11,141 nucleotides of DNA from Octopus sinensis (lineage: Eukaryota), in the NCBI RefSeq assembly GCF_006345805.1, contig NW_021827076.1:1-11141 (forward strand). Direction: 5' to 3'. Below, piece after piece: positions 1 to 10,479 of the stretch (position 1 is its first letter; each line of letters begins with the position of its first letter). The translations under genes and the position numbers were made by a program. The notes below the pieces were generated by a model. The model ran no database searches, was not told the DNA's origin, and saw only the letters and a list, made by a program, of their open reading frames with translations.

Positions 1-120
1 AGATACAAGACCTTGTATGTCCTTCCCACAATTACGACATCTGGCACGGCTTCCGGTCTTTCCAGGAATAATACGTTTATCAAAATAAGCCCACAAAGAA
101 TCACGCTTTCTTCCAGACAT
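1..120 (-). CDS. hAT transposase N-terminus, BED zinc finger (partial, 40 aa)
   Basis: Manual translation from ATG at 120: MSGRKRDSLWAYFDKRIIPGKTGSRARCRNCGKDIQGLVS. It has the W-x-Y/F motif plus CxxC of a BED finger. Not in the supplied ORF track. Confidence 0.85.
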   Translation of the reverse strand, partial: MSGRKRDSLWAYFDKRIIPGKTGSRARCRNCGKDIQGLVS

Positions 121-227: not shown

Positions 228-969
228 CTCTAAATGGACTCGGCCATTGGACTCGTCCACAACTGTTTGGATTCAGTAATTCTCAACCGTGGTGCACAAA
301 CTTTGGAATACGCAGCATACAAAAAGGAGATAAAAGTGTTTTGAAACAACTATCGTGTGCATTCGCCCGGGGAAGGGATTCACATAAACAACCGACTCCC
401 GAAGAACAACAAAACAATCATAAAATGTATTCACCTCTAAATTAATTTTATAGACATGAATGGGGTCTCTAAAATTAGACATACTTATATTGCTTGTAAC
501 GAATTATGGGCCTCAGCACATATATTTTTGTAAAATTATGTTAATAATTGTGAGAAAATAAAAACGATTTGAAAAAAATTGATGTTAGTCCCTCAAATGT
601 GATCAGCCACGTATAGATTGGTTATTTTAAAAAAAACCAAATAAGAAAATCCACTAATCACTGTTAATAATGTTTATCAGTATTTATAAATGACTTCAAA
701 TCGACTTCCTTGGTATAAGAAAAGACTTGAGAAACCAATAAACATACTAATAATGAATAATGAGAAATAAACAGCAAATAGAAAAATAAAAAGAAAATAT
801 GTTCATAATAATGAATAAAAATATGTAAAAATTTAATTTTTATTAATACAAAATTCCATAAAGGACCACAAGAAAACGAATAACAGAAACGTATTAACAA
901 GTTGATTGTAATTGATTGTTAATATGTCAATTAATTTTATAATTTTTATGAATTATAAAGTATAATAAA

Positions 970-1010
970 TGTCACCGGTTTTAGAGCGGACCCGGTTTTT
1001 GGAAGGACCA
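970..1010 (+). repeat. Terminal inverted repeat of the Ginger-like element (downstream of the integrase gene)
   Basis: TGTCACCGGTTTTAGAGCGGACCCGGTTTTTGGAAGGACCA is the reverse complement of 10300-10340 with 4 mismatches. Confidence 0.9.
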
Positions 1011-1313
1011 CACAAAAAATTGTATAAATCGTTTTATTTTATCCTGAAAATAGTTATACAATAAATTAAACCATGTTTAAATAATTTCTTAAGCTGTTTC
1101 TGATTTTATCATTGCTCACAAAACCAACATACCCTTCAAAAGTGCTTTTTAAATTTTAAATAAGTAATTTTATTTGATTTTTGTGTAAAATATTAAAAAA
1201 ACATTATATCTTTATTTAATGATTTTAAACCTAAATATTTTAAAAATTCAAATCTTAAAATAACTGTCAATAAAAAACTATTCTAACCCACAAGGTTTGA
1301 TATAAAAATTCAA

Positions 1314-1340
1314 CTAGTCCCCTATGCGGCCTACGGCCGC
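1314..1340 (-). other. Helitron-3'-end-like motif (GC hairpin plus CTAG)
   Basis: GCGGCC-TAC-GGCCGC hairpin (1326-1340), followed on the minus strand 8 nt later by CTAG|T. No matching 5' TC terminus identified. Confidence 0.4.
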
Positions 1341-1370
1341 GGTATCTCTTCACTTAGAGAATTTTAAAAT

Positions 1371-1478
1371 TTAGTTAAACTTTTTTATTCTAGAAATATT
1401 AATATTTTTATGGACATTTCCATTTTCATCTTCTAAAGAATAGTTGTAATTATTTTCTTCGATAATTTTATATTTTGT
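1371..1478 (-). pseudogene. Integrase C-terminal segment and stop codon
   Basis: After collapsing the ATTTTGT duplication, the frame continues NITK/YKIIEENNYNYSLEDENGNVHKNINISRIKKFN* (TAA 1371-1373). It resembles the SH3-like C-terminal region of gypsy/Ginger integrases. Confidence 0.65.
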
Positions 1479-2292
1479 TGTATCTTGTCACCAAATGTGT
1501 TAATGCCAAACTGGCCGATTTCATCGAGGCATTTGGCTTAATCTCAGATAATCAGCTTGGGACGAGGAAGCAATGTCAAGGCGCCAAAGAGCAAGCCCTC
1601 ATTAACCAATGCTTAAATAAAGAGTATGGAAATGGCCTCTATTCTGCTTGGGTCGATGTGAAGAAGGCATTTGACTCAGTTGATCACGAGTTCTTGTTCC
1701 ACGTATTGGATTGCTCTGGAATACCACATTGGATTGTCAGCTTTGTAAAAAACATAGTCAAGAAGTGGACAGTAAACTTACATATCGATGGGAAAAGAAT
1801 TGGGAAAGTAAAGTTAAGCCGGGGAATACTCCAAGGAGATTCATTGTCCCCGCTGCTATTCGTTATGGCGATGGATCCCCTAAGCAGGATGCTTAACTCC
1901 ATGTTTCCCAAACTCGAAATTAGTCGGGAAGATCCCAATATGTTGACATACTCCACCAATCATTTCTTCTTTATTGACGATCTGAAAATAGTTGCCCTCA
2001 AAGAAGATGTGTTAGTCAAAATGATGGAGGCTGTTAATGGATTTTTTGAAAGTGTCGGCCTAGAGATGAATTCCGAAAAATCAGCATCTAATGTGGAATC
2101 TTTATCATGCTGTGAGACTGTCGATGGAATCAACGGATATCGCTACTTGGGTGTACTTGAAGATGGCGGAAGTAATGTTCTCAAGAATAAAGTTATGGAC
2201 TCCATATTGGAGAATGTCAAGAAGAGGATAACTATGTTGTCAAAAACAAACCTGAATGCTGTAAATTTGTTTCGTGGAATCAATGAATATGC
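1479..2292 (+). mobile_element. Internal reverse-transcriptase fragment of an R4/Dong-like non-LTR retrotransposon, truncated at both ends
   Basis: Open frame with QLG, AWVDVKKAFDSVDH, RGILQGDSLSPLLF, FIDD and YRYLG motifs. Flanked by ATTTTGT at 1472-1478 and 2293-2299. The clade call rests on motif resemblance only. Confidence 0.8.
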
Positions 2293-2399
2293 ATTTTGTG
2301 ATGTTTTTCAAAACAGATTCACAATTTTCAGATGAAATATTATCCGAGTTTGCTTGATAACAAATTTCCGCGTTTTCATCTTCAGCGTCAAAAGCCATT
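2293..2399 (-). pseudogene. Integrase segment between the LINE and RT-fragment insertions
   Basis: After collapsing the CCATT duplication, the frame continues NTM/AFDAEDENAEICYQANSDNISSENCESVLKNITK. It is in frame and AT-rich like the rest of the gene, but has no diagnostic motif. Confidence 0.65.
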
Positions 2400-2600
2400 A
2401 GACCTTCAAGCTGTTTTGTATTTGGCCGGATCACAGCCTCCAAAGCACGGATTACATTACAACGCTCAGGCTCCTTCACTCTTGAGTTCAGGAGCCCCGA
2501 GATGCTGATGCATTCTCGGCTGAGCTTGCAAGATTGAACCCGTTGGCGAAGGCGGCCATAAACTTGCCTTAGTTACTCCGCAAAAGTCAGCACTAGTCCT

Positions 2601-3424
2601 AAGGGGATTCCGCGATGGATCTCCAATCGGGACCTAGAGCTGCACCTGAAGGAAACCCTCAGTTCGGTGTTCGTTCTCGAGCGATTCACGCGAGATGGTC
2701 TCAACATCCCAGTTGCTAAGCTGACGCTTGACTCACGAGCTGAAGCTACTTCTTTGATCCGCACCGGAATCACAGCTGGTTTCTGCCTTATCACCTGTGA
2801 ATGGTTCAGACCTCCTGTCGTCCGATGTTTCCATTGTCAGAGATTCGGACACCTGTCCCGTAACTGTCAAGAAAAAGCCCGGTGCTTATACTGCGGCAAG
2901 GACCACGACCGAAGGGAATGCCCAGGCAGCAAACAAAGTCTAGTGGAGCCCTGCGGTCGGCATTGTATCAATTGTGACCGCCCCGGCCACCTCGCATCGT
3001 ATGGTGGATGCCCTACGGCCAAAGCTGCAACAGCAGCTAAATGGGCCGCCCGCGCAGAAGCAATGCCTCGGTCTCCTAACCCAACCCGCATGGTAATGGT
3101 AAAAGCTAAGCCGGTCACGCCTATCTGGAAAGTACGGCCGCTAATAACCCCGTGTGTGGCGGACGCCCATACCCAGACGACGCAAGTCGTTGAGGTGGTG
3201 CGCAGAGCATGCAGGCCCCTGTCGCCGAGGCTATGAAACCGAGGCCCGTCAGCCCAATAAGGAACGGTACTCAGCAGGCCAAAACGCAGGCGAAGGTAGA
3301 CTCTCAAAACAAGGATGCTCTGTTGGAATTTTACCAACGCTGTGTCGACGCACTGCTGAAACTGGGAGTCAAACCCAAGAAGCTAGTAGAGCTCCTATCA
3401 GAGAGGAGCTCGTCAGCAAAATGA
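2601..3424 (+). pseudogene. LINE ORF1 (gag-like nucleic-acid-binding protein) remnant with three zinc knuckles
   Basis: KGIPRWISNRDLELHL... then CFHCQRFGHLSRNC, CLYCGKDHDRREC and CINCDRPGHLASYGGC. Frameshifts are inferred near 2605 and before 3236; the probable final frame ends at TGA 3422-3424. Confidence 0.8.
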
Positions 3425-3600
3425 CCACGCCACTAAAAATCATCGCTGTGAATGCCCGATCTGTCAAGAGACGGCACCTCGACTTCGTTGAGATGGTAAA
3501 CAGCGGCCATCCTGACTTAATCGTCGTCAACGAGTCTAAGCTGAAAGAAGGTCAATGCTTCGAATTGCCAGGATACTGCTCCCTTGACCTGAAATGGAGA
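3421..3600 (+). pseudogene. LINE ORF2 N-terminus, apurinic/apyrimidinic endonuclease fragment
   Basis: MTTPLKIIAVNARSVKRR...PDLIVVNESKL...FELPGY matches the N(A/V)xS and (Q/N)E(T/S)KL motifs of APE domains. Similarity stops near 3600 (approximate deletion junction). Confidence 0.8.
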
Positions 3601-3901
3601 AATAAGTCTACGCCGATCTACGCGCCCCGCTACCCAACTGGGCAGAGGAGAAATCTCCACTAATCGAGAAAGTCATCCTTGATTCCATCCGAACTTTTCG
3701 TCGGCGGTCTCAGGTGACCGATCTTTTCGTGGATCGCGTCTGAAATTCAATCAGAGAGTGACTCTTCAAAAACCCGGCTCATATATTCCCTTAGGACGAA
3801 TCTCGGCAGAGCTCGACTGTCTTCGCAGTCGTCTCGTTTAACCTCGTCCAACCTTTTTACTTAGTCTCTGTTTTACTTACAATAAAACTTTCCATTCCAT
3901 T

Positions 3902-3987
3902 CCATTGTATTTGGCAGAAAATCACTTCCATAATTCATAAAAATGCTGAATGGTCTATGCTTTGTAGTTGCATGGACCGTCTTATTA
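3902..3987 (-). pseudogene. Integrase segment following the 3988-8835 insertion
   Basis: After collapsing the TATTA duplication, the frame continues YDYN/KTVHATTKHRPFSIFMNYGSDFLPNTM, the conserved YN-x-T-x-H-x-T-T-x-x-x-PF motif of retroviral-type integrases. Confidence 0.85.
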
Positions 3988-3992
3988 TGTCA

Positions 3993-4029
3993 CATGCCCC
4001 ACGCGTTACCATGCCCCACGCGTTACCAT
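3993..4029 (+). repeat. 17-bp tandem repeat inside the left TIR of the MITE-like element
   Basis: CATGCCCCACGCGTTAC x2.2; degenerate copies occur in the right TIR. Confidence 0.9.
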
Positions 4030-4182
4030 TGCTCTAAATTTCTAAAATTTCAATTAAAAATATTTAGACGATTGAAATATATTTACTTATTAATTTAAAA
4101 ATTAATAATATTATGGATTTTTATTTTTTCAATGCTTAACCATTAAAATTAAAAAACAATAAATTAAGCATGCTGTTTATTG

Positions 4183-4536
4183 TCGGGGTTAGGGCTAAGG
4201 TAAAGATTAGGGTTAGGGTAAAGGTTAGGGTAAAGGTTGGGGTTAGGGTAAAGGTTAGGGTAAAGGTTGGGGTAAAGGTTGGGGTTAGGGTTAGGGTAAA
4301 GGTTAGGGTAAAGGTTGGGGTTAGGGTAAAGGTTAGGGTAAAGGTTGGGGTTAGGGTTAGGGTAAAGGTTAGGGTAAAGGTTGGGGTTAGGGTAAAGGTT
4401 GGGGTTAGGGTAAAGGTTAGGGTAAAGGTTGGGGTTAGGGTTAGGGTAAAGGTTAGGGTAAAGGTTGGGGTTAGGGTAAAGGTTAGGGTAAAGGTTGGGG
4501 TTAGGGTAAAGGTTAGGGTAAAGGTTGGGGTTAGGG
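4183..4536 (+). repeat. Interstitial telomere-like hexamer array with higher-order structure
   Basis: 59 in-register hexamers, mostly TTAGGG (A), TAAAGG (B) and TTGGGG (C), arranged as ABABC (30 nt) and AABABC (36 nt) units. The first few units are degenerate. Confidence 0.97.
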
Positions 4537-4548
4537 TTTGAAAAAATT

Positions 4549-7500
4549 TGAAAGTGCTTGTTGTGATACTGTCACGATCAAATCAATCTTTCTTATAACC
4601 GCGTTAATGTAGAATTTTCGAATGGAGATACAAAGATTTTTTTTTTTTCACGTGTTGGTTCTTGTGGTGTTTTCTTGTCTCGTTCCTATCTCGTTCTAAA
4701 TCAATTCCAATCCAATCTTCCTTTCTTATTTTTCTTTTTTTTTCCAATTTACCCCCTTTTTATCTTTCCTTTCCAATCTTGTTCTTCCCTCTCTTTCTTG
4801 TCTCTCTATCTCTCTATTTTTCTTTCTCAATCTTATCTTTACTCTATCTACTAACTCACTTTTATCACTCTCTATCTTTTCATACCTCTTCAATGGCCCA
4901 CAAGCATTTTCTCCATGAAAACACCCCATGTGGCATTTGCCTCTCATCCTCCTCCAAAAAGAACGGTCTTCGCTGCTCTTCGTGTTTCACCTTCCTCCAC
5001 CTTAGCTGCCTTAAAATCCCAAAAAAATCCGCAGCTATTATCCCAAAACTACTCTGCCCTTCTTGCCTTCCGTTGTCCAGTAACTCCCCTAAAATGTGTG
5101 GCGAGATAGATGTCGCAGCTCAAGTCCCATCCTGTCCGAGCGCCGAAGAGGTGCTACTATCTATCTCTCTAATACGTAAAAATCGCTATGTTCTCACTAA
5201 GATTCCTAAATCCGCACGCCCTTCGGCGGCTGACGCCCTTTCCACCGTTATTCAAAGCGCTCTGGACCTGAAAACTCCGTTCGCTTGGATCCGCGTCTTC
5301 TTGTTCCCCCTTTATGCCTTGGGATTGCCTTACAACTGCAAATCCGACTGCTCCTTATCCTCATTAGTCAAGCATAATATCTCCAGTTTCCTGAACTCTT
5401 CCTCCTGTGACCTCTTCCTATCGGAGATTATTACCGACAACTGTCCATCCACTTCTTCCAACATAACTGATTCTTGCCGTGAGGAGTCCAATTCGGCTCC
5501 TGACTCAGGCGCTTACCTCGGCCACCGTATCATGGCCAAGCTAATGGAAGGCGACGTACGCGCTGCGCTGAGGGTACTGGCATCCAACGGGGGAGTTCTG
5601 GAATCCTCACCTGGTGTGGTCAACACCCTTAGAAACAAACATCCATCGAGCCCATCCGATCTCCGACCTTTTCCATCCACCAATTCAATTCCACTTGGCC
5701 CGGCTCTTAGCTTCGAAGCTGTGTGCCAGGCCATAAACTCATTTTCGCCAAGCAGTAGCGGAGGATTGGACGGTCTCCGTCCCAGTCATCTTCGCAACCT
5801 AATCTCGAGCCAAATCGGTGAATCGGGCAGGCGGCTTGTCAATGTCGTAAATTCTCTTATAAACCAAATGCTTGCTGCTGACATCCCCCCCTTCGCTCGC
5901 AATCTCTTGTTCTCGGCCAATCTTCTTCCCTTTTCGAAAAAGGATGGTGGAGTCCGCCCAATCGCGGTTGGCAATGTCTTTCGTCGGTTGGCGTCCAAGA
6001 TTGCCTGCTGGTCTGTTTCTCCCGACCTGAGCAAAAACTTCGTCCCCACTCAAGTCGGAGTCGGAGTCCCTTCCGGTTGTGAGGCGGCTGTCCACGCCGC
6101 CAGGCGGTATCTCTCTACAGCAACACCGAACAGAGTCCTTGTCAAACTGGATATTTCTAACGCTTTCAACAGCGTCCGACGTGATTCCTTATTAGATGCT
6201 TGCTTGTCTCGGTGTCCATCAATTTACCGTTATGTTGATCTGTCCTACGGTTCCCCCAGTTCTTTGATTTGTGGTTCTTCAGCCATCTCTTCTGAAAACG
6301 GAGTCCAACAGGGGGACCCTCTGGCCCTCTCCTGTTCTCTCTTGCTATTGACAGTGCCGTTAAAGCATGCCAGTCCGAGTTCAACGTCTGGTATCTGGAC
6401 GATGCCACCATCGGGGGCCCCGCATGCTCAATCCTCGAAGATCTGAACAATATAATCCCCGCACTTTTTTCCCTTGGCCTGTCTATAAACCCTTCGAAAT
6501 CTGAGATTTTTAACATCTCTTATGATCCCAATTATTTTAACACATCTATCTATCCATTATTTAATTCGCTTCTCCCTAATATCAAGGCTGTTACATCCTC
6601 TGATCTTATTGTCCTTGGCTCCCCAATCTTTTCCTCGGCTATCCCTTCCTTCCTGGAGCTTAAGCTCACAAAAATACAAGAATCTATAGCCACACTTAAA
6701 ACAGTCGACGCACATGCTGCCTTCTTCCTGATCAAAAATTTCCTTGCTTTCCCCCGGTTACAATTTTTTTACAGTCCGCCCCTTGTCACCGCCATCATTG
6801 TGCTCTTCAGCACTTCGATCTTTTGCTAAGAAACTCAATTTCGGCTAATACTAATGTCAATTTTGATGATGCCGGGTGGCAACAAGCGATCCTGCCAGTC
6901 CGTCACGGCGGACTAGGTCTGCAAGCTCCTTCTGTTTTGGCTCTCCCTTTCTACCTTTCTTCGTCATACCGCTGTAGTCCGCTTGTCCTTAGGATTCTTT
7001 CTCCCCATTCCGAATCCGTTCTGGACCAAGAGCTTTCTCATGGTATCGAAGTTTGGTCTTCCCGTGGCTTCGACATTCCTTGCTATCCCTGCTATACAAA
7101 GGCGTGGACGGAAACAATGTTTCTTCAGTTATACAATTCGCTATTATCCTCCTGTGATCAACACCGGCGCGCTTGTCTTTTGGCCGCATCCTCCGAATGG
7201 AGTGGCGCTTGGCTCAACGCATACCCTTCCGGAAATACGGGAACCCTGCTGGACCCAAAAAGTGTGCAGATTGGCATTTCTCTTAGACTTGGTCTGGACA
7301 TCTGCTTTCCACACACTTGCCGCTGTGGTTCTGTCGTAGATCGGAAAGGTCTCCATCCACTTTCCTGTCGCAAAAGCCCTGGCCGGATTCCCAGGCATTC
7401 TGAATTAAATTCCGTAGTAAAACATGCACTTGAAGCAGCCGGATTTCCCTGTCAGCTGGAGCCTCCTGGCCTTCTAAGGGAGGATGGTAAGAGACCTGAC

Positions 7501-7900
7501 GGGGTCTCACTCTTTCCCTACAAGAACGGGAAAGCAATCGTCTGGGATGCGACATGCTCTGATACTTTCGCATCATCATGTCTTTCCTTGTCGGCGGTCG
7601 AGGCTGGCTCAGCAGCCAAGAGGGCGGAGACGAAGAAGGCATCTAAGTACGCCTCCCTGATGGACCGTTTCATCTTCGAACCGGTGTCAGTGGAAACTTC
7701 CGGTGTACTTGGCCCGTCTACTCTCCGTTTCCTCTCGAAGATCGGAAGGTCATTGGGAAGGGCGAGGAACGACCCCCGTGAACTGATGTGGCTTTTTGAG
7801 CGCATCTCTCTCGCAGTTCTAAGGGGGAACTGTTCCTCGATCCTCCTCTCGGCTGCGGTTCCGCCTCTAATTAGTGATTTCTTTACCTTATAAACTGTCA

Positions 7901-7944
<44 letters not shown>
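4549..7944 (+). mobile_element. Apparently full-length CRE-clade non-LTR retrotransposon (RT plus restriction-like endonuclease)
   Basis: Pyrimidine-rich 5' UTR, a single long ORF and a 39-nt A run at 7906-7944 directly after the stop. The 5' boundary is tentative, based on a candidate AAAAAATT duplication (4541-4548 and the end of the A run to 7946). Confidence 0.85.
4893..7893 (+). CDS. CRE-clade polyprotein, about 1000 aa after repairing two 1-bp deletions: PHD finger, RT, CCHC knuckle, PD-(D/E)xK endonuclease
   Basis: N-terminal CGIC..CSSC..HLSC..CPSC. RT motifs KKDGGVRPIAVG, KLDISNAFNS, GVQQGDPL and WYLDD. C-terminal CRCG..HPLSC, RHSELN, EP..DGKRPDG..WDAT and AETKKASKY. Frameshifts at about 6323-6325 and in the T run at 6764-6770. 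Confidence 0.9.
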
Positions 7945-7946
<2 letters not shown>

Positions 7947-8182
7947 AGTTTACATGAAAAGAATCAAATAAAGGACAAAATATAATTTTAAATTTTATAA
8001 ACTATCAAATTATGTTGCTTAAGCTTTCACACAATTCACATCATTTAAAATATGTTTTAATGTCCGTAGCAGTCATAATGTTTTGTTGTATTAAAAATAT
8101 ATATTTTAATTTATTTATTTTAAAGCATCTTTTAGTATATCATTAAATTGTACTCTAATTAACTTTATATATAATTTGAATT

Positions 8183-8729
8183 CGGACGGCACGCTCTCTC
8201 ATGCAGACGCAGTGCAGGCCGGTTTCCAAGACATCACGCAATGAACCTAATTGTCAAGAACGCTTTGCATGCAGCTGGTTTCCCGGCACAGCTGGAGCCT
8301 CCTGGTCTCATCCGCACAGACGGAAAAAGACCTGATGGGATAACAATTTTCCCGTACACCAACGGGAAGTGCCTTGTTTGGGACTGCGCTTGCACCGACA
8401 CCTACTCAGAGACAAACCTGATCGCCTCAGCCTCCTCTCCAGGATATGCTTCACAGAACTACGAAAAAATTAAAATATTCAGAGCTCAAGGACAGGTTCA
8501 TAGTGCAACCGATTATTGTGGAGTCATCTGGAGTCTTCGGTCCGGAATCAATCTCTTTTATTAGGAAACTTGGATCCCTGATCTCGGTTCAGACGAAAGA
8601 TAGAAGGGAGACCGAATGGCTGTTTCAACGCCTTTCAACAACCGTTGTCAGAGGTAATAGCCACGCTATCCTTTCTGCTCTTAAGCAACCTTAATCCTTT
8701 TAACTTATTTTTCTTTTATAACATTGGCT
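8183..8729 (+). mobile_element. 5'-truncated 3' fragment of a second, diverged CRE family (endonuclease domain only)
   Basis: GRHALSCRRSAGRFPRHHAMN...EPPGLIRTDGKRPDG...WDCACTDT...KYSELKDRF...WLFQRLS...RGNSHAIL*, with one frameshift at the A run 8472-8475. Candidate 9-bp duplication ATTTGAATT at 8174-8182 and 8730-8738. No clear poly(A). Confidence 0.85.
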
Positions 8730-8939
8730 ATTTGAATTTTATTGCATTATGATTGTTTTAATTTTTCTTAAAAATTAAAAATCATATTTCTCAGAGGTAA
8801 CGAGTGGGGCATAGTAATCGCTGAGGCATGTGACATATTATAATCATACGTAATTTTTTTAATAATGTCCACATATCTTCCAAAATTTCCATTCGATGCA
8901 CTAGTCGAAGATATTCAGTTTTTAATGGATTGGTTAAAT

Positions 8940-8965
8940 CTAAAAATTCATAAATTAGTAATTAC
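8940..8965 (-). other. Integrase intron 4 (26 nt, phase 2)
   Basis: GTAATTACTAATTTATGAATTTTTAG. Removal restores QGQVER/FNQSIK. Confidence 0.9.
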
Positions 8966-9210
8966 CTCTCCACTTGGCCTTGTATCCACGGTGCGCGTGG
9001 TCTTCCACATACGTGATATATATCAAATTCAGCACATAACTCGTTCAAATGGGAATTGTTAAACTCTTTTCCATTGTCGGTTTGCAAAATAATTGGAGCA
9101 CCAATAATATAGAAAATATTTCTGAAGAGACTAGATATTTCTTTTGCTGTCTTAGTTTTAGATAATTCAACAGCTGCATACTTTGAAAACGAATCAATGA
9201 TAACAAGAAC

Positions 9211-9233
9211 CTAAAATATAACAATGGTAATAC
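9211..9233 (-). other. Integrase intron 3 (23 nt, phase 0)
   Basis: GTATTACCATTGTTATATTTTAG. Removal restores the frame to W/VLVIIDSFSKY. Confidence 0.9.
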
Positions 9234-9359
9234 CCATGAATTTGAATCGTTTAATTCCGAATATCTCCTTAAGTCAATGAGATCGGCTATGTATCTATCA
9301 CGCGGGCCTCTCGCAATGATTGGCCTAATAGGAGGTTTTGTTGCCATTAATCTCTTTGA

Positions 9360-9386
9360 CTAATCGCCTTATTTTAATTATTATAC
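9360..9386 (-). other. Integrase intron 2 (27 nt, phase 0)
   Basis: GTATAATAATTAAAATAAGGCGATTAG. Removal deletes in-frame stops and joins CVFCQ to SKRLMATKPP. Confidence 0.9.
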
Positions 9387-9509
9387 CTGACAAAAAACAC
9401 AGTTTTTAATAACATTTTCAATCTCATTTCGAGTAACACCGTAAATTTTTTCTGACAGCTGACTAATCATTATTCTATCTCTGCCAAAATGATTAGAATT
9501 ATGTGCCTT

Positions 9510-9536
9510 CTAAACATAAGGAGATTTATAGATAAC
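9510..9536 (-). other. Integrase intron 1 (27 nt, phase 0)
   Basis: GTTATCTATAAATCTCCTTATGTTTAG. Removal deletes an in-frame TAG and joins MIE to KAHNSNH. Confidence 0.8.
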
Positions 9537-9739
9537 CTCAATCATTGTTAGCTTTAGTTCTTTCTCTTCTATACAAAAAAATCTGAGTAAGCAATTGTTT
9601 TTTCGAATAAATGCCTTTCCGTCAGAGAATTCAAATTTTTTTGCGTGAATTCTAAATCTATGCTTTTCTCTTTTTTCAATCACTTCATCTAGATCCCTCA
9701 ACTCTTTGATTTTTTTAATTTTTTGAAGATTAGCATTTG

Positions 9740-10151
9740 GCTGAAGACTAAGCTATGGATAATGGATTTGGATGGTCGTGAGTTCGATTCCGAAGGAGGA
9801 CAGTTTTCATCCTGGGGCTAATTCTCGTTATCGTTCCCCTGCCCGTGAGGCAACGAGTACTTCTGGCACGACACAGTTGGAAATGGGGATCTCTTACCTT
9901 CCGGGCTTAGCGTGGCGTTACGGGGTCCACCATGTCAGTTGGAAATTCCTTCGGATATGGCAACGCTCAGGAGGCACTTAATGCCTTCCGAAAAAGGACT
10001 CTTAGCTTCTCAGACCCTGGGACATCGTCGTCTCAGGCCGATCTTGCGGGAAGGATTGAACCTTTCAGAAGGATCTCCCTCGTTTGGATCGGCGATCACG
10101 GGATTAACTATAATTAACTGGCTTGCCCGTATTGGTCTTTAAATAATAATA
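9740..10151 (+). mobile_element. 412-bp retroposed insert with a (TAA)n tail; SINE or truncated LINE 3' end
   Basis: 11-bp TSD ATTAGCATTTG (9729-9739, 10152-10162). Ends ...CTTTAAATAATAATA. Pol III box-B-like GTTCGATTC at 9782-9790. Removal restores the integrase start MGFVVLSNAN/LQKIKK. Confidence 0.8.
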
Positions 10152-10299
10152 ATTAGCATTTGAAAGTACAACGAAGCCCATTTTTTATGTTGAATTTAAT
10201 TAATTAATTATTACAATAATATAATAAAAAATAAAACCAATTTTTATTTTTTAATGAAAATAAATTATTTTATCCATTTTTTATTTTAATATACGCACC

Positions 10300-10340
10300 T
10301 GGTCCTTCCAAAAACCGGGTCTGCTCAGAAACCGGTCACA
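10300..10340 (-). repeat. Terminal inverted repeat of the Ginger-like element (upstream of the integrase gene)
   Basis: Reverse complement reads TGTGACCGGTTTCTGAGCAGACCCGGTTTTTGGAAGGACCA; followed on the + strand by ATAAA. Confidence 0.9.
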
Positions 10341-10479
10341 ATAAATAACAACAAATGAATAAATTATTGGGAAGGGAATTGAGGAGGTCCAACAAAGGGC
10401 CCACAGATTAACCGATCGTTGGTCGCACGCAAATTTAAACTGTGAGGTTTTTCGAATATATTTTTTACATTAGCATTAA

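What the first reader, a model, noticed from the sequence alone, without database searches (positions are those of the whole stretch)
970..10340. A complete integrase gene is hidden in pieces across 8.8 kb and reassembles when four nested insertions are removed
Four insertions, each bounded by its own direct repeat (ATTAGCATTTG 11 bp, TATTA 5 bp, CCATT 5 bp, ATTTTGT 7 bp), interrupt one minus-strand gene. Collapsing them and splicing four tiny introns gives an uninterrupted frame of about 367 codons from ATG 10181 to TAA 1371, with HHCC and D,D(35)E motifs and one internal stop. All four junctions rejoin in frame, and the TATTA junction rebuilds a conserved motif (YN/KTVHATT..PF). The TIRs and ATAAA TSD then bound a compact element of about 1.77 kb. 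About 7.6 kb of foreign DNA, from six events counting the inner CREs, accumulated while the ORF acquired only one obvious point lesion. That implies a very high local insertion rate (inference). No ORF caller would report this gene.
Basis: partly seen in the sequence, partly recalled or inferred. Interest (0 to 1): 0.85.

Follow-up and report, generated by a model that had tools for sequence, protein, structure and literature searches.

The report
Dead Ginger-like transposon split by insertions

Summary
A 41-nt terminal inverted repeat pair (970-1010 / 10300-10340, TGTCACCGG...) with a perfect 5-bp duplication (ATAAA) bounds 9.4 kb. Removing four insertions leaves a 1,767-bp element. Removing four GT..AG mini-introns of 23-27 nt then gives a 367-codon minus-strand frame with one TGA. 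The frame scores above Pfam thresholds for rve and Integrase_H2C2.

Uninterrupted relatives confirm three of the four junctions and all four intron positions. These are an intronless 413-aa protein inside a 2.27-kb element with near-identical TIRs, and two Octopus sinensis copies.

Corrections:
- The gene is not complete. Its C-terminal third is about 45 residues shorter than in every full-length relative.
- The ATTTTGT "duplication" flanks a LINE piece cut at both ends, so it is doubtful.
- CCATT overlaps the inserted LINE's own (TCCAT)3 tail.
- The nested LINE is itself frameshifted, so no exceptional insertion rate is needed.

The element is Ginger2/Tdd-like in structure, but its deep phylogenetic position is unresolved. 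The host is probably a cephalopod.

One unusual point remains: the introns are shorter than 30 nt, a size reported among animals only in myxozoans and in dicyemids, which are octopus parasites.

The parts
965..969 (.). Left copy of the 5-bp target-site duplication ATAAA of the outer element
   Evidence: Directly next to the TIR end and identical to 10341-10345. Chance about 0.003.
970..1010 (+). Left terminal inverted repeat of the outer Ginger-like element (TGTCACCGGTTTTAGAGCGGACCCGG...)
   Evidence: (I1). The motif TGTSACCG..GC.GACCC..TTGG..GGACC is shared with the TIRs of L001 and with the left end of the L003 copy.
1371..1478 (-). Last coding piece of the integrase (..TKYKIIEENNYNYSLEDENGNVHKNINISRIKKFN, stop TAA 1373-1371)
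   Evidence: tblastn places P0001 aa 378-410 at 1478-1380, E=1.9e-4. Translation.
1479..2292 (+). Internal piece of a LINE with a restriction-like endonuclease (reverse-transcriptase region only), cut at both ends; flanked by ATTTTGT at 1472-1478 and 2293-2299
   Evidence: Pfam RVT_1 E=7.7e-26. 70% identical, without gaps, to aa 517/520-790 of the 1,141-aa O. sinensis protein XP_029654503.1.
2300..2399 (-). Integrase coding piece (AFDAEDENAEICYQANSDNISSENCESVLKNITK); the roughly 40-codon shortfall against relatives lies here or at its 3' junction
2400..3906 (+). Internally deleted LINE-like retroposon: CCHC gag-like ORF, first ~60 aa of an AP-endonuclease ORF, AATAAA, (TCCAT)3 tail; CCATT also at 2395-2399
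   Evidence: ORFs 2667-3236 and 3421-3663. zf-CCHC 20.5 bits, just under the 20.8-bit cut-off. Tail read from the sequence. The junction is colinear with homologues: DFLPNTMAFD against DHLNSLEAFD.
3907..3987 (-). Integrase coding piece (KTVHATTKHRPFSIFMNYGSDFLPNT)
   Evidence: tblastn hits of P0002, P0003 and P0005 at 4031-3921.
3988..8835 (.). Inner non-autonomous TIR element (TGTCACATGCC... ends, ~40-nt TIRs), flanked by the 5-bp duplication TATTA (3983-3987 / 8836-8840)
   Evidence: (I2). It has no transposase ORF of its own. It shares the TGTCA terminus and the 5-bp duplication with the outer element.
4187..4537 (+). 12-nt satellite (GGTTAGGGTAAA, about 28 copies) inside the inner element
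   Evidence: (D1/D2).
4540..7944 (+). Near full-length LINE with a restriction-like endonuclease: PHD finger, reverse transcriptase (YLDD), CCHC plus PD..D/E..K endonuclease, 39-nt poly(A); two frameshifts (~6325, ~6770). The 5' boundary is approximate
   Evidence: Pfam PHD and RVT_1. Frames. Poly(A). No duplication found.
8180..8700 (+). 5'-truncated piece (endonuclease domain) of a second, diverged LINE of the same type; boundaries approximate
   Evidence: ORFs 8241-8564 and 8446-8694, compared by eye with 7380-7890.
8841..9739 (-). Main integrase block: exon parts 9739-9537, 9509-9387, 9359-9234, 9210-8966 and 8939-8841. Mini-introns 9536-9510 (27 nt), 9386-9360 (27), 9233-9211 (23) and 8965-8940 (26). 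Internal TGA at 8917-8915
   Evidence: tblastn of intact homologues. Same intron positions in O. sinensis copies. The TGA column is W in the closest relatives.
9740..10151 (+). SINE-like retroposon (412 bp, B-box-like GAGTTCGATTCC near the 5' end, A/T-rich tail), flanked by the 11-bp duplication ATTAGCATTTG (9729-9739 / 10152-10162)
   Evidence: Chance about 0.002 even with slack. Its core 9892-10086 is 83% identical to O. sinensis L004 9782-9969. No Rfam or tRNA call.
10163..10181 (-). First coding piece of the integrase (ATG at 10181; MGFVVL(S))
   Evidence: The N-terminus is colinear with the O. sinensis L003 copy (MGFVKLKASDLKIIKEIQD).
10300..10340 (-). Right terminal inverted repeat of the outer element
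   Evidence: (I1).
10341..10345 (.). Right copy of the duplication ATAAA

Best explanation
Window 970-10340 is one defective copy of a small cut-and-paste DNA transposon. It is 1,767 bp once the later insertions are removed.

The element:
- Its only gene encodes a retroviral-type integrase with an H2C2 zinc-binding domain and a D,D35E catalytic core.
- It has ~41-nt TIRs beginning TGTCA and a 5-bp AT-rich target duplication. This is the anatomy of the Ginger2/Tdd group.
- Inferred mechanism, by analogy with DDE integrases: the transposase binds the TIRs, cuts at the ...CA-3' ends and joins them to target strands staggered by 5 bp.

How it came to be split, after it inserted at ATAAA and stopped being maintained:
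1. A SINE-like retroposon inserted in codons 7-10, with an 11-bp duplication.
2. A 4.85-kb non-autonomous element with TGTCA ends inserted between the N and K of the conserved YN|K..H motif, with a 5-bp duplication. It was presumably moved by a related integrase. It carries a satellite and two endonuclease-bearing LINE insertions.
3. An internally deleted LINE-like retroposon inserted. Its (TCCAT)n tail paired with a CCATT in the target.
4. A LINE reverse-transcriptase fragment arrived. Its junction is associated with loss of integrase sequence.

The copy also carries a nonsense codon where relatives have W, and lacks about 45 C-terminal residues.

Shown: anatomy, domains, junction colinearity, intron positions, relatives. 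Inferred: the transposition chemistry, the order of the four first-tier insertions, the host (cephalopod), and that the inner element is mobilised in trans.
For: TIR and duplication.

Collapse and splicing.

Domains:
- Pfam rve and Integrase_H2C2 score above their cut-offs.
- The best solved-structure matches are prototype foamy virus integrase (aa 36-278, E=7.5e-12) and Ty3 integrase.

Intact relative: P0001 is 413 aa, intronless, 41% identical over 99% of the query. It sits in a 2,272-bp element bounded by 43-nt TIRs that start TGTCACCG and share the window's TIR motif, with no other ORF.

Junctions:
- SINE junction: the N-terminus is colinear with the L003 copy.
- TATTA junction: blastn homology to L003 stops at window 8838. 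L003 runs on uninterrupted into the sequence that matches window 3982 downwards. The invariant N/H/T/P columns straddle the junction.
- CCATT junction: no residue is gained or lost against P0005.

Introns:
- Removing them restores gap-free alignment to the intronless proteins.
- The same four positions hold GT..AG segments of 26-33 nt in L003.
- Two of them hold segments of 27 and 26 nt in L004, which lacks intron 2.

Ginger features are taken from PMC2836005. GP[YF] and YPYY are absent.

Host: the closest SINE core, LINE and integrase copies are all from Octopus sinensis.
Against: - The NJ tree does not place the family inside the reference Ginger2/Tdd clade. Deep nodes have bootstrap below 25.
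- The TIRs are shorter than the 50-180 bp given for Ginger2.
- The duplication of the intact relative L001 does not match (GTAAA against ATATA). This may be an assembly artefact of a short-read contig.
- The fourth junction (ATTTTGT) is not a clean insertion.
- No uninterrupted copy from the same genome could be retrieved, so the family consensus, the copy number and the age of this copy are unknown.
Confidence: 0.85

Rival explanations
1. The region is an insertion hot spot. About 7.6 kb piled up so fast that the ORF had no time to decay.
For: Six or more insertions lie in a 1.77-kb target. All 33 bp of flanking repeats are still perfect. There are no frameshifts in 1,104 nt of coding sequence.
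Against: - The ORF has more than one lesion: the TGA plus a shortfall of about 45 codons.
- The innermost LINE already has two frameshifts in about 3.2 kb, a lesion density similar to that of the host gene.
- The two other copies I could inspect are also split or truncated.
- The element is 24-30% G+C, and all the repeat sequences are A/T-rich. That fits the ordinary target preference of LINE endonucleases and of Ginger2.
- The two inner LINEs may have entered the inner element before it moved here.
Confidence: 0.15
2. The pieces belong to different integrase copies brought together by misassembly of a repeat-rich region.
For: The region consists entirely of repeats. No reads were available.
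Against: - The five pieces are in order, on one strand and do not overlap.
- They match one homologue colinearly from residue 1 to the stop.
- Each TIR-bounded unit has a matching duplication.
- The outer TIRs pair with each other.
Confidence: 0.04
3. It is the remnant of an LTR retrotransposon or endogenous retrovirus pol gene, not a DNA transposon.
For: The best solved-structure matches are retroviral and Ty3 integrases. Some database names for relatives read 'Gag-Pol polyprotein'.
Against: - Inverted, not direct, terminal repeats enclose nothing but the integrase ORF, both here and in the intact relative L001.
- The reverse-transcriptase sequences in the window are non-LTR types on the opposite strand, inside separately bounded insertions.
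- There is no GPY/F motif.
Confidence: 0.03
4. It is a former host gene derived from a Ginger2 transposase (as KRBA2 and SCAND3 are) that later died. The introns would reflect host-gene status.
For: Introns are present. Relatives carry automatic names such as 'KRAB-A domain-containing protein 2-like' and 'SCAN domain-containing protein 3'. PMC3575427 derives those genes from Ginger2.
Against: - TIRs plus a duplication sit directly around the ORF.
- Several diverged copies exist in O. sinensis, at unrelated loci.
- Ginger1 transposase genes also carry 1-4 introns.
Confidence: 0.03

Closest known systems
Ginger2/Tdd DNA transposons (Bao, Kapitonov & Jurka 2010, PMC2836005; TDD-4/TDD-5 of Dictyostelium)
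   Same: - Cut-and-paste anatomy, with TIRs that begin TGTNR and end ..CA.
- A short A/T-rich target duplication, 5 bp as in TDD-4/5.
- A single protein with an H2C2 zinc finger and a DDE (D,D35E) integrase core.
- No GPY/F or YPYY motif.
- Database names of relatives point to the KRBA2/SCAND3 side.
   Different: - TIRs of about 41-43 nt against 50-180.
- Metazoan Ginger2 elements make 4-bp duplications.
- In my NJ tree the family forms its own clade beside, not inside, the reference Ginger2/Tdd sequences, with no support at deep nodes.
- It carries mini-introns.
- Its nearest intronless relatives are from microsporidia or look microsporidian.
Ginger1 DNA transposons and the GIN1 host gene
   Same: A Gypsy-integrase-like transposase, TGTNR termini, and introns in some transposase genes.
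   Different: Ginger1 has CCGG/CCGT 4-bp duplications, YPYY and GPY/F motifs, and OTU or Ulp1 C-terminal domains. None of these is present here. Ginger1 groups with Gypsy integrases in the tree, away from the window protein.
GingerRoot (PMC6839031)
   Same: A DNA transposon with an integrase-related DDE transposase.
   Different: GingerRoot has a 6-bp GC-rich duplication, TA...TA termini and 100-150 bp TIRs. Here the duplication is 5 bp and A/T-rich, the ends are TG...CA and the TIRs are about 41 nt.
Integrases of Ty3/Gypsy LTR retrotransposons and retroviruses
   Same: The same domain order and catalytic motif. Significant sequence matches to solved integrases.
   Different: No LTRs and no gag, protease, reverse transcriptase or RNase H. 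The integrase ORF alone is bounded by inverted repeats.
Nested transposon clusters in repeat-rich genomes (general knowledge, e.g. nested retrotransposons between maize genes)
   Same: Younger elements sit inside older ones, each with its own duplication. The original element can be recovered by peeling off the layers.
   Different: Nothing essential. Here the bottom layer is a DNA transposon, and one inserted layer is a non-autonomous element with the same kind of ends.

Membership tests
Ginger2/Tdd | Terminal inverted repeats (reported 50-180 bp) | tested here: met
   The TIRs match at 37 of 41 nt, against at most 27 in shuffles. They are somewhat shorter than the published range.
Ginger2/Tdd | Termini follow TGTNR ... 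YNACA | tested here: met
   The left end is TGTCA and the reverse complement of the right end is TGTGA. The same holds in L001, L003 and the inner element.
Ginger2/Tdd | Short A/T-rich target duplication: 4 bp in metazoan Ginger2, 5 bp in TDD-4/5 | tested here: met
   The outer element has exactly 5 bp (ATAAA), and so does the inner element (TATTA). Neither 4 bp nor 6 bp fits. This matches the Tdd value, not the metazoan one.
Ginger2/Tdd | Transposase with an H2C2 zinc finger and a DDE integrase core | tested here: met
   Integrase_H2C2 27.5 bits and rve 39.7 bits, both above their cut-offs. D,D35E read from the sequence.
Ginger2/Tdd | No GPY/F and no YPYY motif | tested here: met
   Pattern search on the reconstruction and on six relatives found neither motif.
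Ginger2/Tdd | Integrase groups with reference Ginger2/Tdd sequences in a phylogeny | tested here: inconclusive
   NJ tree on 224 columns with references from the supplement of PMC2836005. The window family is a clade (bootstrap 96 for its core). It lies next to the Ginger2/Tdd references and away from Ginger1, but the joining nodes have bootstrap 11-24.
Ginger2/Tdd | No reverse transcriptase, RNase H or LTRs belonging to the element | tested here: met
   After collapse, only the integrase ORF lies between the TIRs. The same is true of the intact 2.27-kb relative L001.
Ginger1 | CCGG/CCGT 4-bp duplication, GPY/F and YPYY motifs, OTU or Ulp1 domain | tested here: not met
   The duplication is ATAAA. 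The motifs are absent. Pfam finds no OTU or Ulp1 domain.
GingerRoot | 6-bp GC-rich duplication, TA..TA termini, 100-150 bp TIRs | tested here: not met
   Reverse transcriptase plus a CCHC / PD..D/E..K-type C-terminus is present, read from the sequence. No phylogeny was made. There is no sequence match to solved R2 proteins. No target duplication or target-site pattern could be defined.

The most novel reading that the evidence does not exclude
The integrase gene of this family carries spliceosomal-type introns of only 23-33 nt, at conserved positions, in what appears to be a cephalopod genome.
- The window has introns of 27, 27, 23 and 26 nt.
- O. sinensis copies have 27, 26, 32 and 33 nt, and 27 and 26 nt with intron 2 absent.

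Introns under 30 nt are reported among animals only in myxobolid myxozoans and in Dicyema japonicum, a parasite of O. sinensis (PMC13644364, PMC6736024). The nearest intronless relatives are from microsporidia or look microsporidian.

The most novel reading not excluded is this. The family acquired its introns in a tiny-intron organism, for example a dicyemid, and moved horizontally between parasite and cephalopod host. Alternatively, cephalopods can splice sub-30-nt introns in these genes.
Probability: 0.2. Interest if true: 0.6.

Novelty: new member of a known kind. Interest (0 to 1): 0.3.

Why it matters
As a structure it matters little. Nested insertions into a dead transposon are routine in repeat-rich genomes, and nothing here calls for a new mechanism.

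It is useful in three ways:
- As a worked example: the layers can be peeled off exactly, and relatives confirm the reconstruction.
- As a record of a compact Ginger2/Tdd-like family of about 1.8-2.3 kb. It has conserved TGTSACCG... TIRs and is shared between an octopus-like genome and microsporidian-like sequences.
- As a lead on mini-introns in an animal transposase gene. If those introns are spliced in cephalopods, or came from dicyemid parasites, that bears on the lower size limit of animal introns and on transposon exchange between parasite and host.

Tried and rejected
- **Same-genome copies.** Exact-protein look-ups of three window ORFs found nothing on record. Related copies from O. sinensis and a Logan contig served instead.
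- **RNA annotation of the SINE-like insert.** Rfam found nothing even at E<=1, and ARAGORN found no tRNA. Its tRNA-like head is only read by eye.
- **A site-specific LINE.** I considered that the P0131-type LINE targets this integrase gene, because L003 also has a piece of it about 270 nt beyond the break in its copy. I rejected this. The family is scattered all over L003 and L004, the L003 piece is small, and the two pieces have opposite orientations relative to the integrase gene.
- **The missing C-terminal segment elsewhere in the window.** No convincing hit in any frame.
- **The shorter C-terminus as a family trait.** Rejected for now, because the O. sinensis L004 copy has the segment.
- **A dicyemid or microsporidian source for the window.** The mini-introns suggested it. 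But the nearest SINE core (83%), LINE (70% aa) and integrase copies are all on O. sinensis contigs, one of them 1.29 Mb long and overlapped by a gene model with clathrin Pfam domains. A cephalopod is more likely; it is not proven.
- **A target duplication for the poly(A) LINE.** None found.
- **Clade of the inner LINEs from solved structures.** No R2 match.
- **Handling of the collapsed sequence.** The element is a TIR-bounded cut-and-paste transposon, not a virus or provirus. Even so, the collapsed DNA was used only inside scripts and was not printed.

Full report
**1. What is in the sequence**

The window is A/T-rich. Its background is 24-34% G+C, and blocks of 45-55% G+C coincide with retroelement ORFs.

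The longest inverted repeat pairs 963-1010 with 10300-10347 (I1). Read at the ends, the element starts TGTCACCGG at 970 and ends CCGGTCACA at 10340. ATAAA lies directly outside both ends. The TIRs match at 37 of 41 positions, against at most 27 in shuffled sequence. An identical 5-mer at two fixed positions has a chance of about 0.003 in this composition.

A second inverted repeat pairs 3988-4027 with 8796-8835 (TGTCACATGCC...). TATTA lies directly outside both of its ends (I2, 22).

**2. The reconstruction**

Keeping one copy of each repeat and removing 1479-2299, 2400-3906, 3988-8840 and 9740-10162 leaves 1,767 bp and takes out 7,604 bp.

On the minus strand, four short GT..AG segments interrupt the frame:

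| Mini-intron | Coordinates | Length |
|---|---|---|
| 1 | 9536-9510 | 27 nt |
| 2 | 9386-9360 | 27 nt |
| 3 | 9233-9211 | 23 nt |
| 4 | 8965-8940 | 26 nt |

Without them, 1,104 nt read as 367 codons from ATG 10181 to TAA 1373-1371. There is one internal TGA at 8917-8915.

- The protein scores above Pfam's own thresholds for rve (39.7 against 32.6 bits) and Integrase_H2C2 (27.5 against 25.5).
- It matches solved retroviral-type integrases, including prototype foamy virus integrase at E=7.5e-12 and Ty3.
- The H-x3-H-x30-C-x2-C and D,D(35)E motifs are there.

**3. Independent test with relatives**

The window's ORFs are not on record in the collection. Relatives did the job instead.

A search with the reconstruction found P0001. 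It is 413 aa, intronless, and 41% identical over 99% of the query. Other hits came from microsporidia (Enteropsectra, Dictyocoela, Pseudoloma, Nosema granulosis, Cucumispora), from Octopus sinensis, and more distantly from Mytilus, rotifers and others.

P0001 lies on a 2,342-nt contig, inside a 2,272-bp element. That element has 43-nt TIRs beginning TGTCACCG and no other ORF. Its TIRs, the window's TIRs and the left end of an O. sinensis copy share the pattern TGTSACCG..GC.GACCC..TTGG..GGACC. So the TIRs belong to this integrase family.

Two O. sinensis loci hold copies that are 58-68% identical in protein:
- L003, contig VCDQ01012456.1
- L004, contig VCDQ01000492.1, 1.29 Mb. The retrieved stretch lies partly inside a gene model whose product carries clathrin Pfam domains.

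*Junctions*

| Junction | Result |
|---|---|
| SINE site | The N-terminus MGFVVLSNANLQKIKKIKE is colinear, without gaps, with MGFVKLKASDLKIIKEIQD of L003 |
| TATTA site | DNA homology to L003 stops at window 8838, at the inner element's end. L003 runs straight on into the sequence that matches window 3982 downwards. In the 11-protein alignment the invariant columns N, H, T and P lie on both sides of the junction |
| CCATT site | DFLPNTM/AFD aligns residue for residue with DHLNSLEAFD of P0005 |
| ATTTTGT site | Not confirmed (see section 4) |

*Introns*
- Leaving intron 1 in place produces a 9-residue insertion with a stop, relative to all ten relatives. Removing the four segments gives gap-free alignment to the intronless proteins.
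- L003 has GT..AG segments of 27, 26, 32 and 33 nt at the same four codon positions.
- L004 has 27 and 26 nt at positions 3 and 4 and no segment at position 2.
- The segments differ in sequence while the flanking codons are conserved. This is how introns behave.

*The TGA*

The TGA falls in a column that is W in the closest relatives and in both octopus copies. It is a nonsense lesion.

**4.

(a) *The gene is not complete.* From the YN..H motif to the stop the window has 100 residues. P0001, P0005 and the L004 copy have 144-146. The conserved segment W-K-x-D...I-G-D-x-V-x-L...D-x-D-x-N....P-L is missing. No trace of it lies elsewhere in the window. The shortfall falls in or beside the 100-bp piece 2300-2399.

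(b) *The LINE piece at 1479-2292 is not a simple retrotransposition product.*
- It is 70% identical, without gaps, to residues 517/520-790 of a 1,141-aa O. sinensis protein. That protein continues for 350 more residues into a CCHC and restriction-like endonuclease domain.
- A target-primed insertion keeps the element's 3' end, and this piece does not have it.
- With boundaries free by 12 nt either side, some shared 7-mer appears by chance in 12% of trials.
- Most likely the junction was reshaped by a deletion that also removed integrase sequence. Reverse transcription primed from inside the RNA is an alternative. I could not decide between the two.

(c) *CCATT is not separable from the insert's own tail.* CCATT occurs three times in tandem at 3892-3906. 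That stretch is the (TCCAT)3 tail of the inserted LINE-like element, just after its AATAAA signal. The "duplication" cannot be told apart from tail-to-target microhomology. A shared 5-mer is expected by chance in 58% of trials. The junction is validated by colinearity, not by the repeat.

(d) *The rate argument does not hold.*
- The host ORF has at least one nonsense codon and a shortfall of about 45 codons.
- The innermost LINE, which has a pure 39-nt poly(A), already has two frameshifts in about 3.2 kb.
- The L004 copy is itself split by a 1.45-kb TIR element, and the L003 copy is truncated.
- The two inner LINEs may also have entered the inner element before it moved here.
- Repeat density and A/T-rich targets explain the pile-up.

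**5. The insertions**

- **9740-10151:** 412 bp, with a B-box-like GAGTTCGATTCC near the start, an A/T-rich tail and an 11-bp duplication. It is a SINE-like retroposon. Its core is 83% identical to a stretch of O. sinensis L004. Rfam and ARAGORN do not call it.
- **3988-8835:** a non-autonomous element with TGTCA ends and a 5-bp duplication, the same end type as the outer element. It was presumably mobilised by a related integrase (inference). It holds:
  - a 12-nt satellite;
  - a 3.4-kb LINE with a PHD finger, reverse transcriptase and a restriction-like endonuclease;
  - a 5'-truncated piece of a second such LINE.
  
- **2400-3906:** a CCHC gag-like ORF, the first ~60 residues of an AP-endonuclease ORF, then 3' sequence. 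This is an internally deleted LINE derivative.

**6. Classification**

The published Ginger2/Tdd features (PMC2836005) are TIRs, TGTNR termini, a short A/T-rich duplication (5 bp in TDD-4/5), and H2C2 plus DDE with no GPY/F or YPYY.

All are met here. Two differences remain: the TIRs are somewhat shorter, and metazoan Ginger2 elements make 4-bp duplications. Ginger1 and GingerRoot features are not met.

I built an NJ tree on 224 aligned columns, with reference integrases copied from that paper's supplement.
- The window protein falls in a well-supported clade with P0001, P0002, P0003 and P0005 (bootstrap 96).
- That clade lies beside the Ginger2/Tdd references and away from Ginger1, which groups with Gypsy.
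- The deep joins have bootstrap 11-24, so membership by phylogeny is inconclusive.
- Automatic names of relatives ("SCAN domain-containing protein 3", "KRAB-A domain-containing protein 2-like") point the same way, since those genes derive from Ginger2 (PMC3575427).

**7. Host and the one unusual point**

The nearest SINE core, LINE proteins (70%, 66% and 76% identity) and integrase copies are all from O. sinensis. The window therefore most likely comes from an octopus or a related cephalopod.

Introns under 30 nt are reported among animals only for myxobolid myxozoans and Dicyema japonicum (PMC13644364). D. japonicum lives in O. sinensis (PMC6736024). The closest intronless relatives of the integrase are from microsporidia or look microsporidian.

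Three questions stay open:
- whether the mini-introns are spliced in cephalopods;
- whether the family came from a tiny-intron parasite;
- whether the window itself is parasite DNA.

This is the only part of the finding that goes beyond routine.

**8. Verdict**

The reading of the sequence is careful and largely correct, and the biology is ordinary. I rate it a new member of a known kind. Interest is low to moderate, and it rests on the mini-introns and the cephalopod/microsporidian distribution.

Noticed in passing
window 8940-9536 (four segments); L003 8911-9519; L004 5118-5415: The integrase gene has GT..AG mini-introns of 23-33 nt at conserved positions in three diverged copies. One of them is absent from the L004 copy. 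This size class is otherwise reported in animals only for myxozoans and dicyemids.
   Followed up: partly
window 1-120 (minus strand): The start of an ORF with a BED zinc finger (MSGRKRDSLWAYFDK...; Pfam zf-BED 20.6 bits, at its cut-off). It runs off the left edge and may be a hAT-type transposase or a ZBED gene.
   Followed up: no
window 4187-4537: A satellite of about 28 copies of GGTTAGGGTAAA, with a telomere-like TTAGGG core. It lies inside the inner TIR element, directly upstream of the 5' end of the poly(A) LINE. It could be part of that LINE's target or of its 5' end.
   Followed up: no
window 1479-2292 and flanks: A LINE reverse-transcriptase piece cut at both ends (aa 517-790 of 1,141) but flanked by a perfect 7-bp repeat. 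It sits exactly where the integrase is missing residues. The mechanism is unresolved.
   Followed up: partly
window 4540-7944: A LINE with an N-terminal PHD finger, reverse transcriptase (YLDD) and a C-terminal CCHC plus restriction-like endonuclease. It has a 39-nt pure poly(A), two frameshifts and no detectable target duplication.
   Followed up: partly
L003 6001-15228 (O. sinensis VCDQ01012456.1): The RefSeq model 'craniofacial development protein 2-like' (P0016) is a chimera. It joins a LINE AP-endonuclease domain to one exon of the Ginger-like integrase, ending exactly at the mini-intron 3 boundary.
   Followed up: partly
L004 about 5490-6955 (O. sinensis VCDQ01000492.1): The O. sinensis copy of the integrase is itself split by a ~1.45-kb TIR element with CTGTAACAGCAAAAAGG... 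ends. An unrelated H2C2 integrase-like ORF lies at L004 ~880-1200.
   Followed up: no
L001 58-62 and 2335-2339: The intact relative's flanks do not form a duplication (GTAAA against ATATA). The short-read contig may join flanks of different copies.
   Followed up: no
(hit lists): The family is abundant in several microsporidian genomes (Nosema granulosis, Dictyocoela, Cucumispora, Enteropsectra, Pseudoloma). There it is annotated variously as Gag-Pol, Tf2 polyprotein or SCAND3. This patchy distribution alongside cephalopods suggests horizontal transfer.
   Followed up: no
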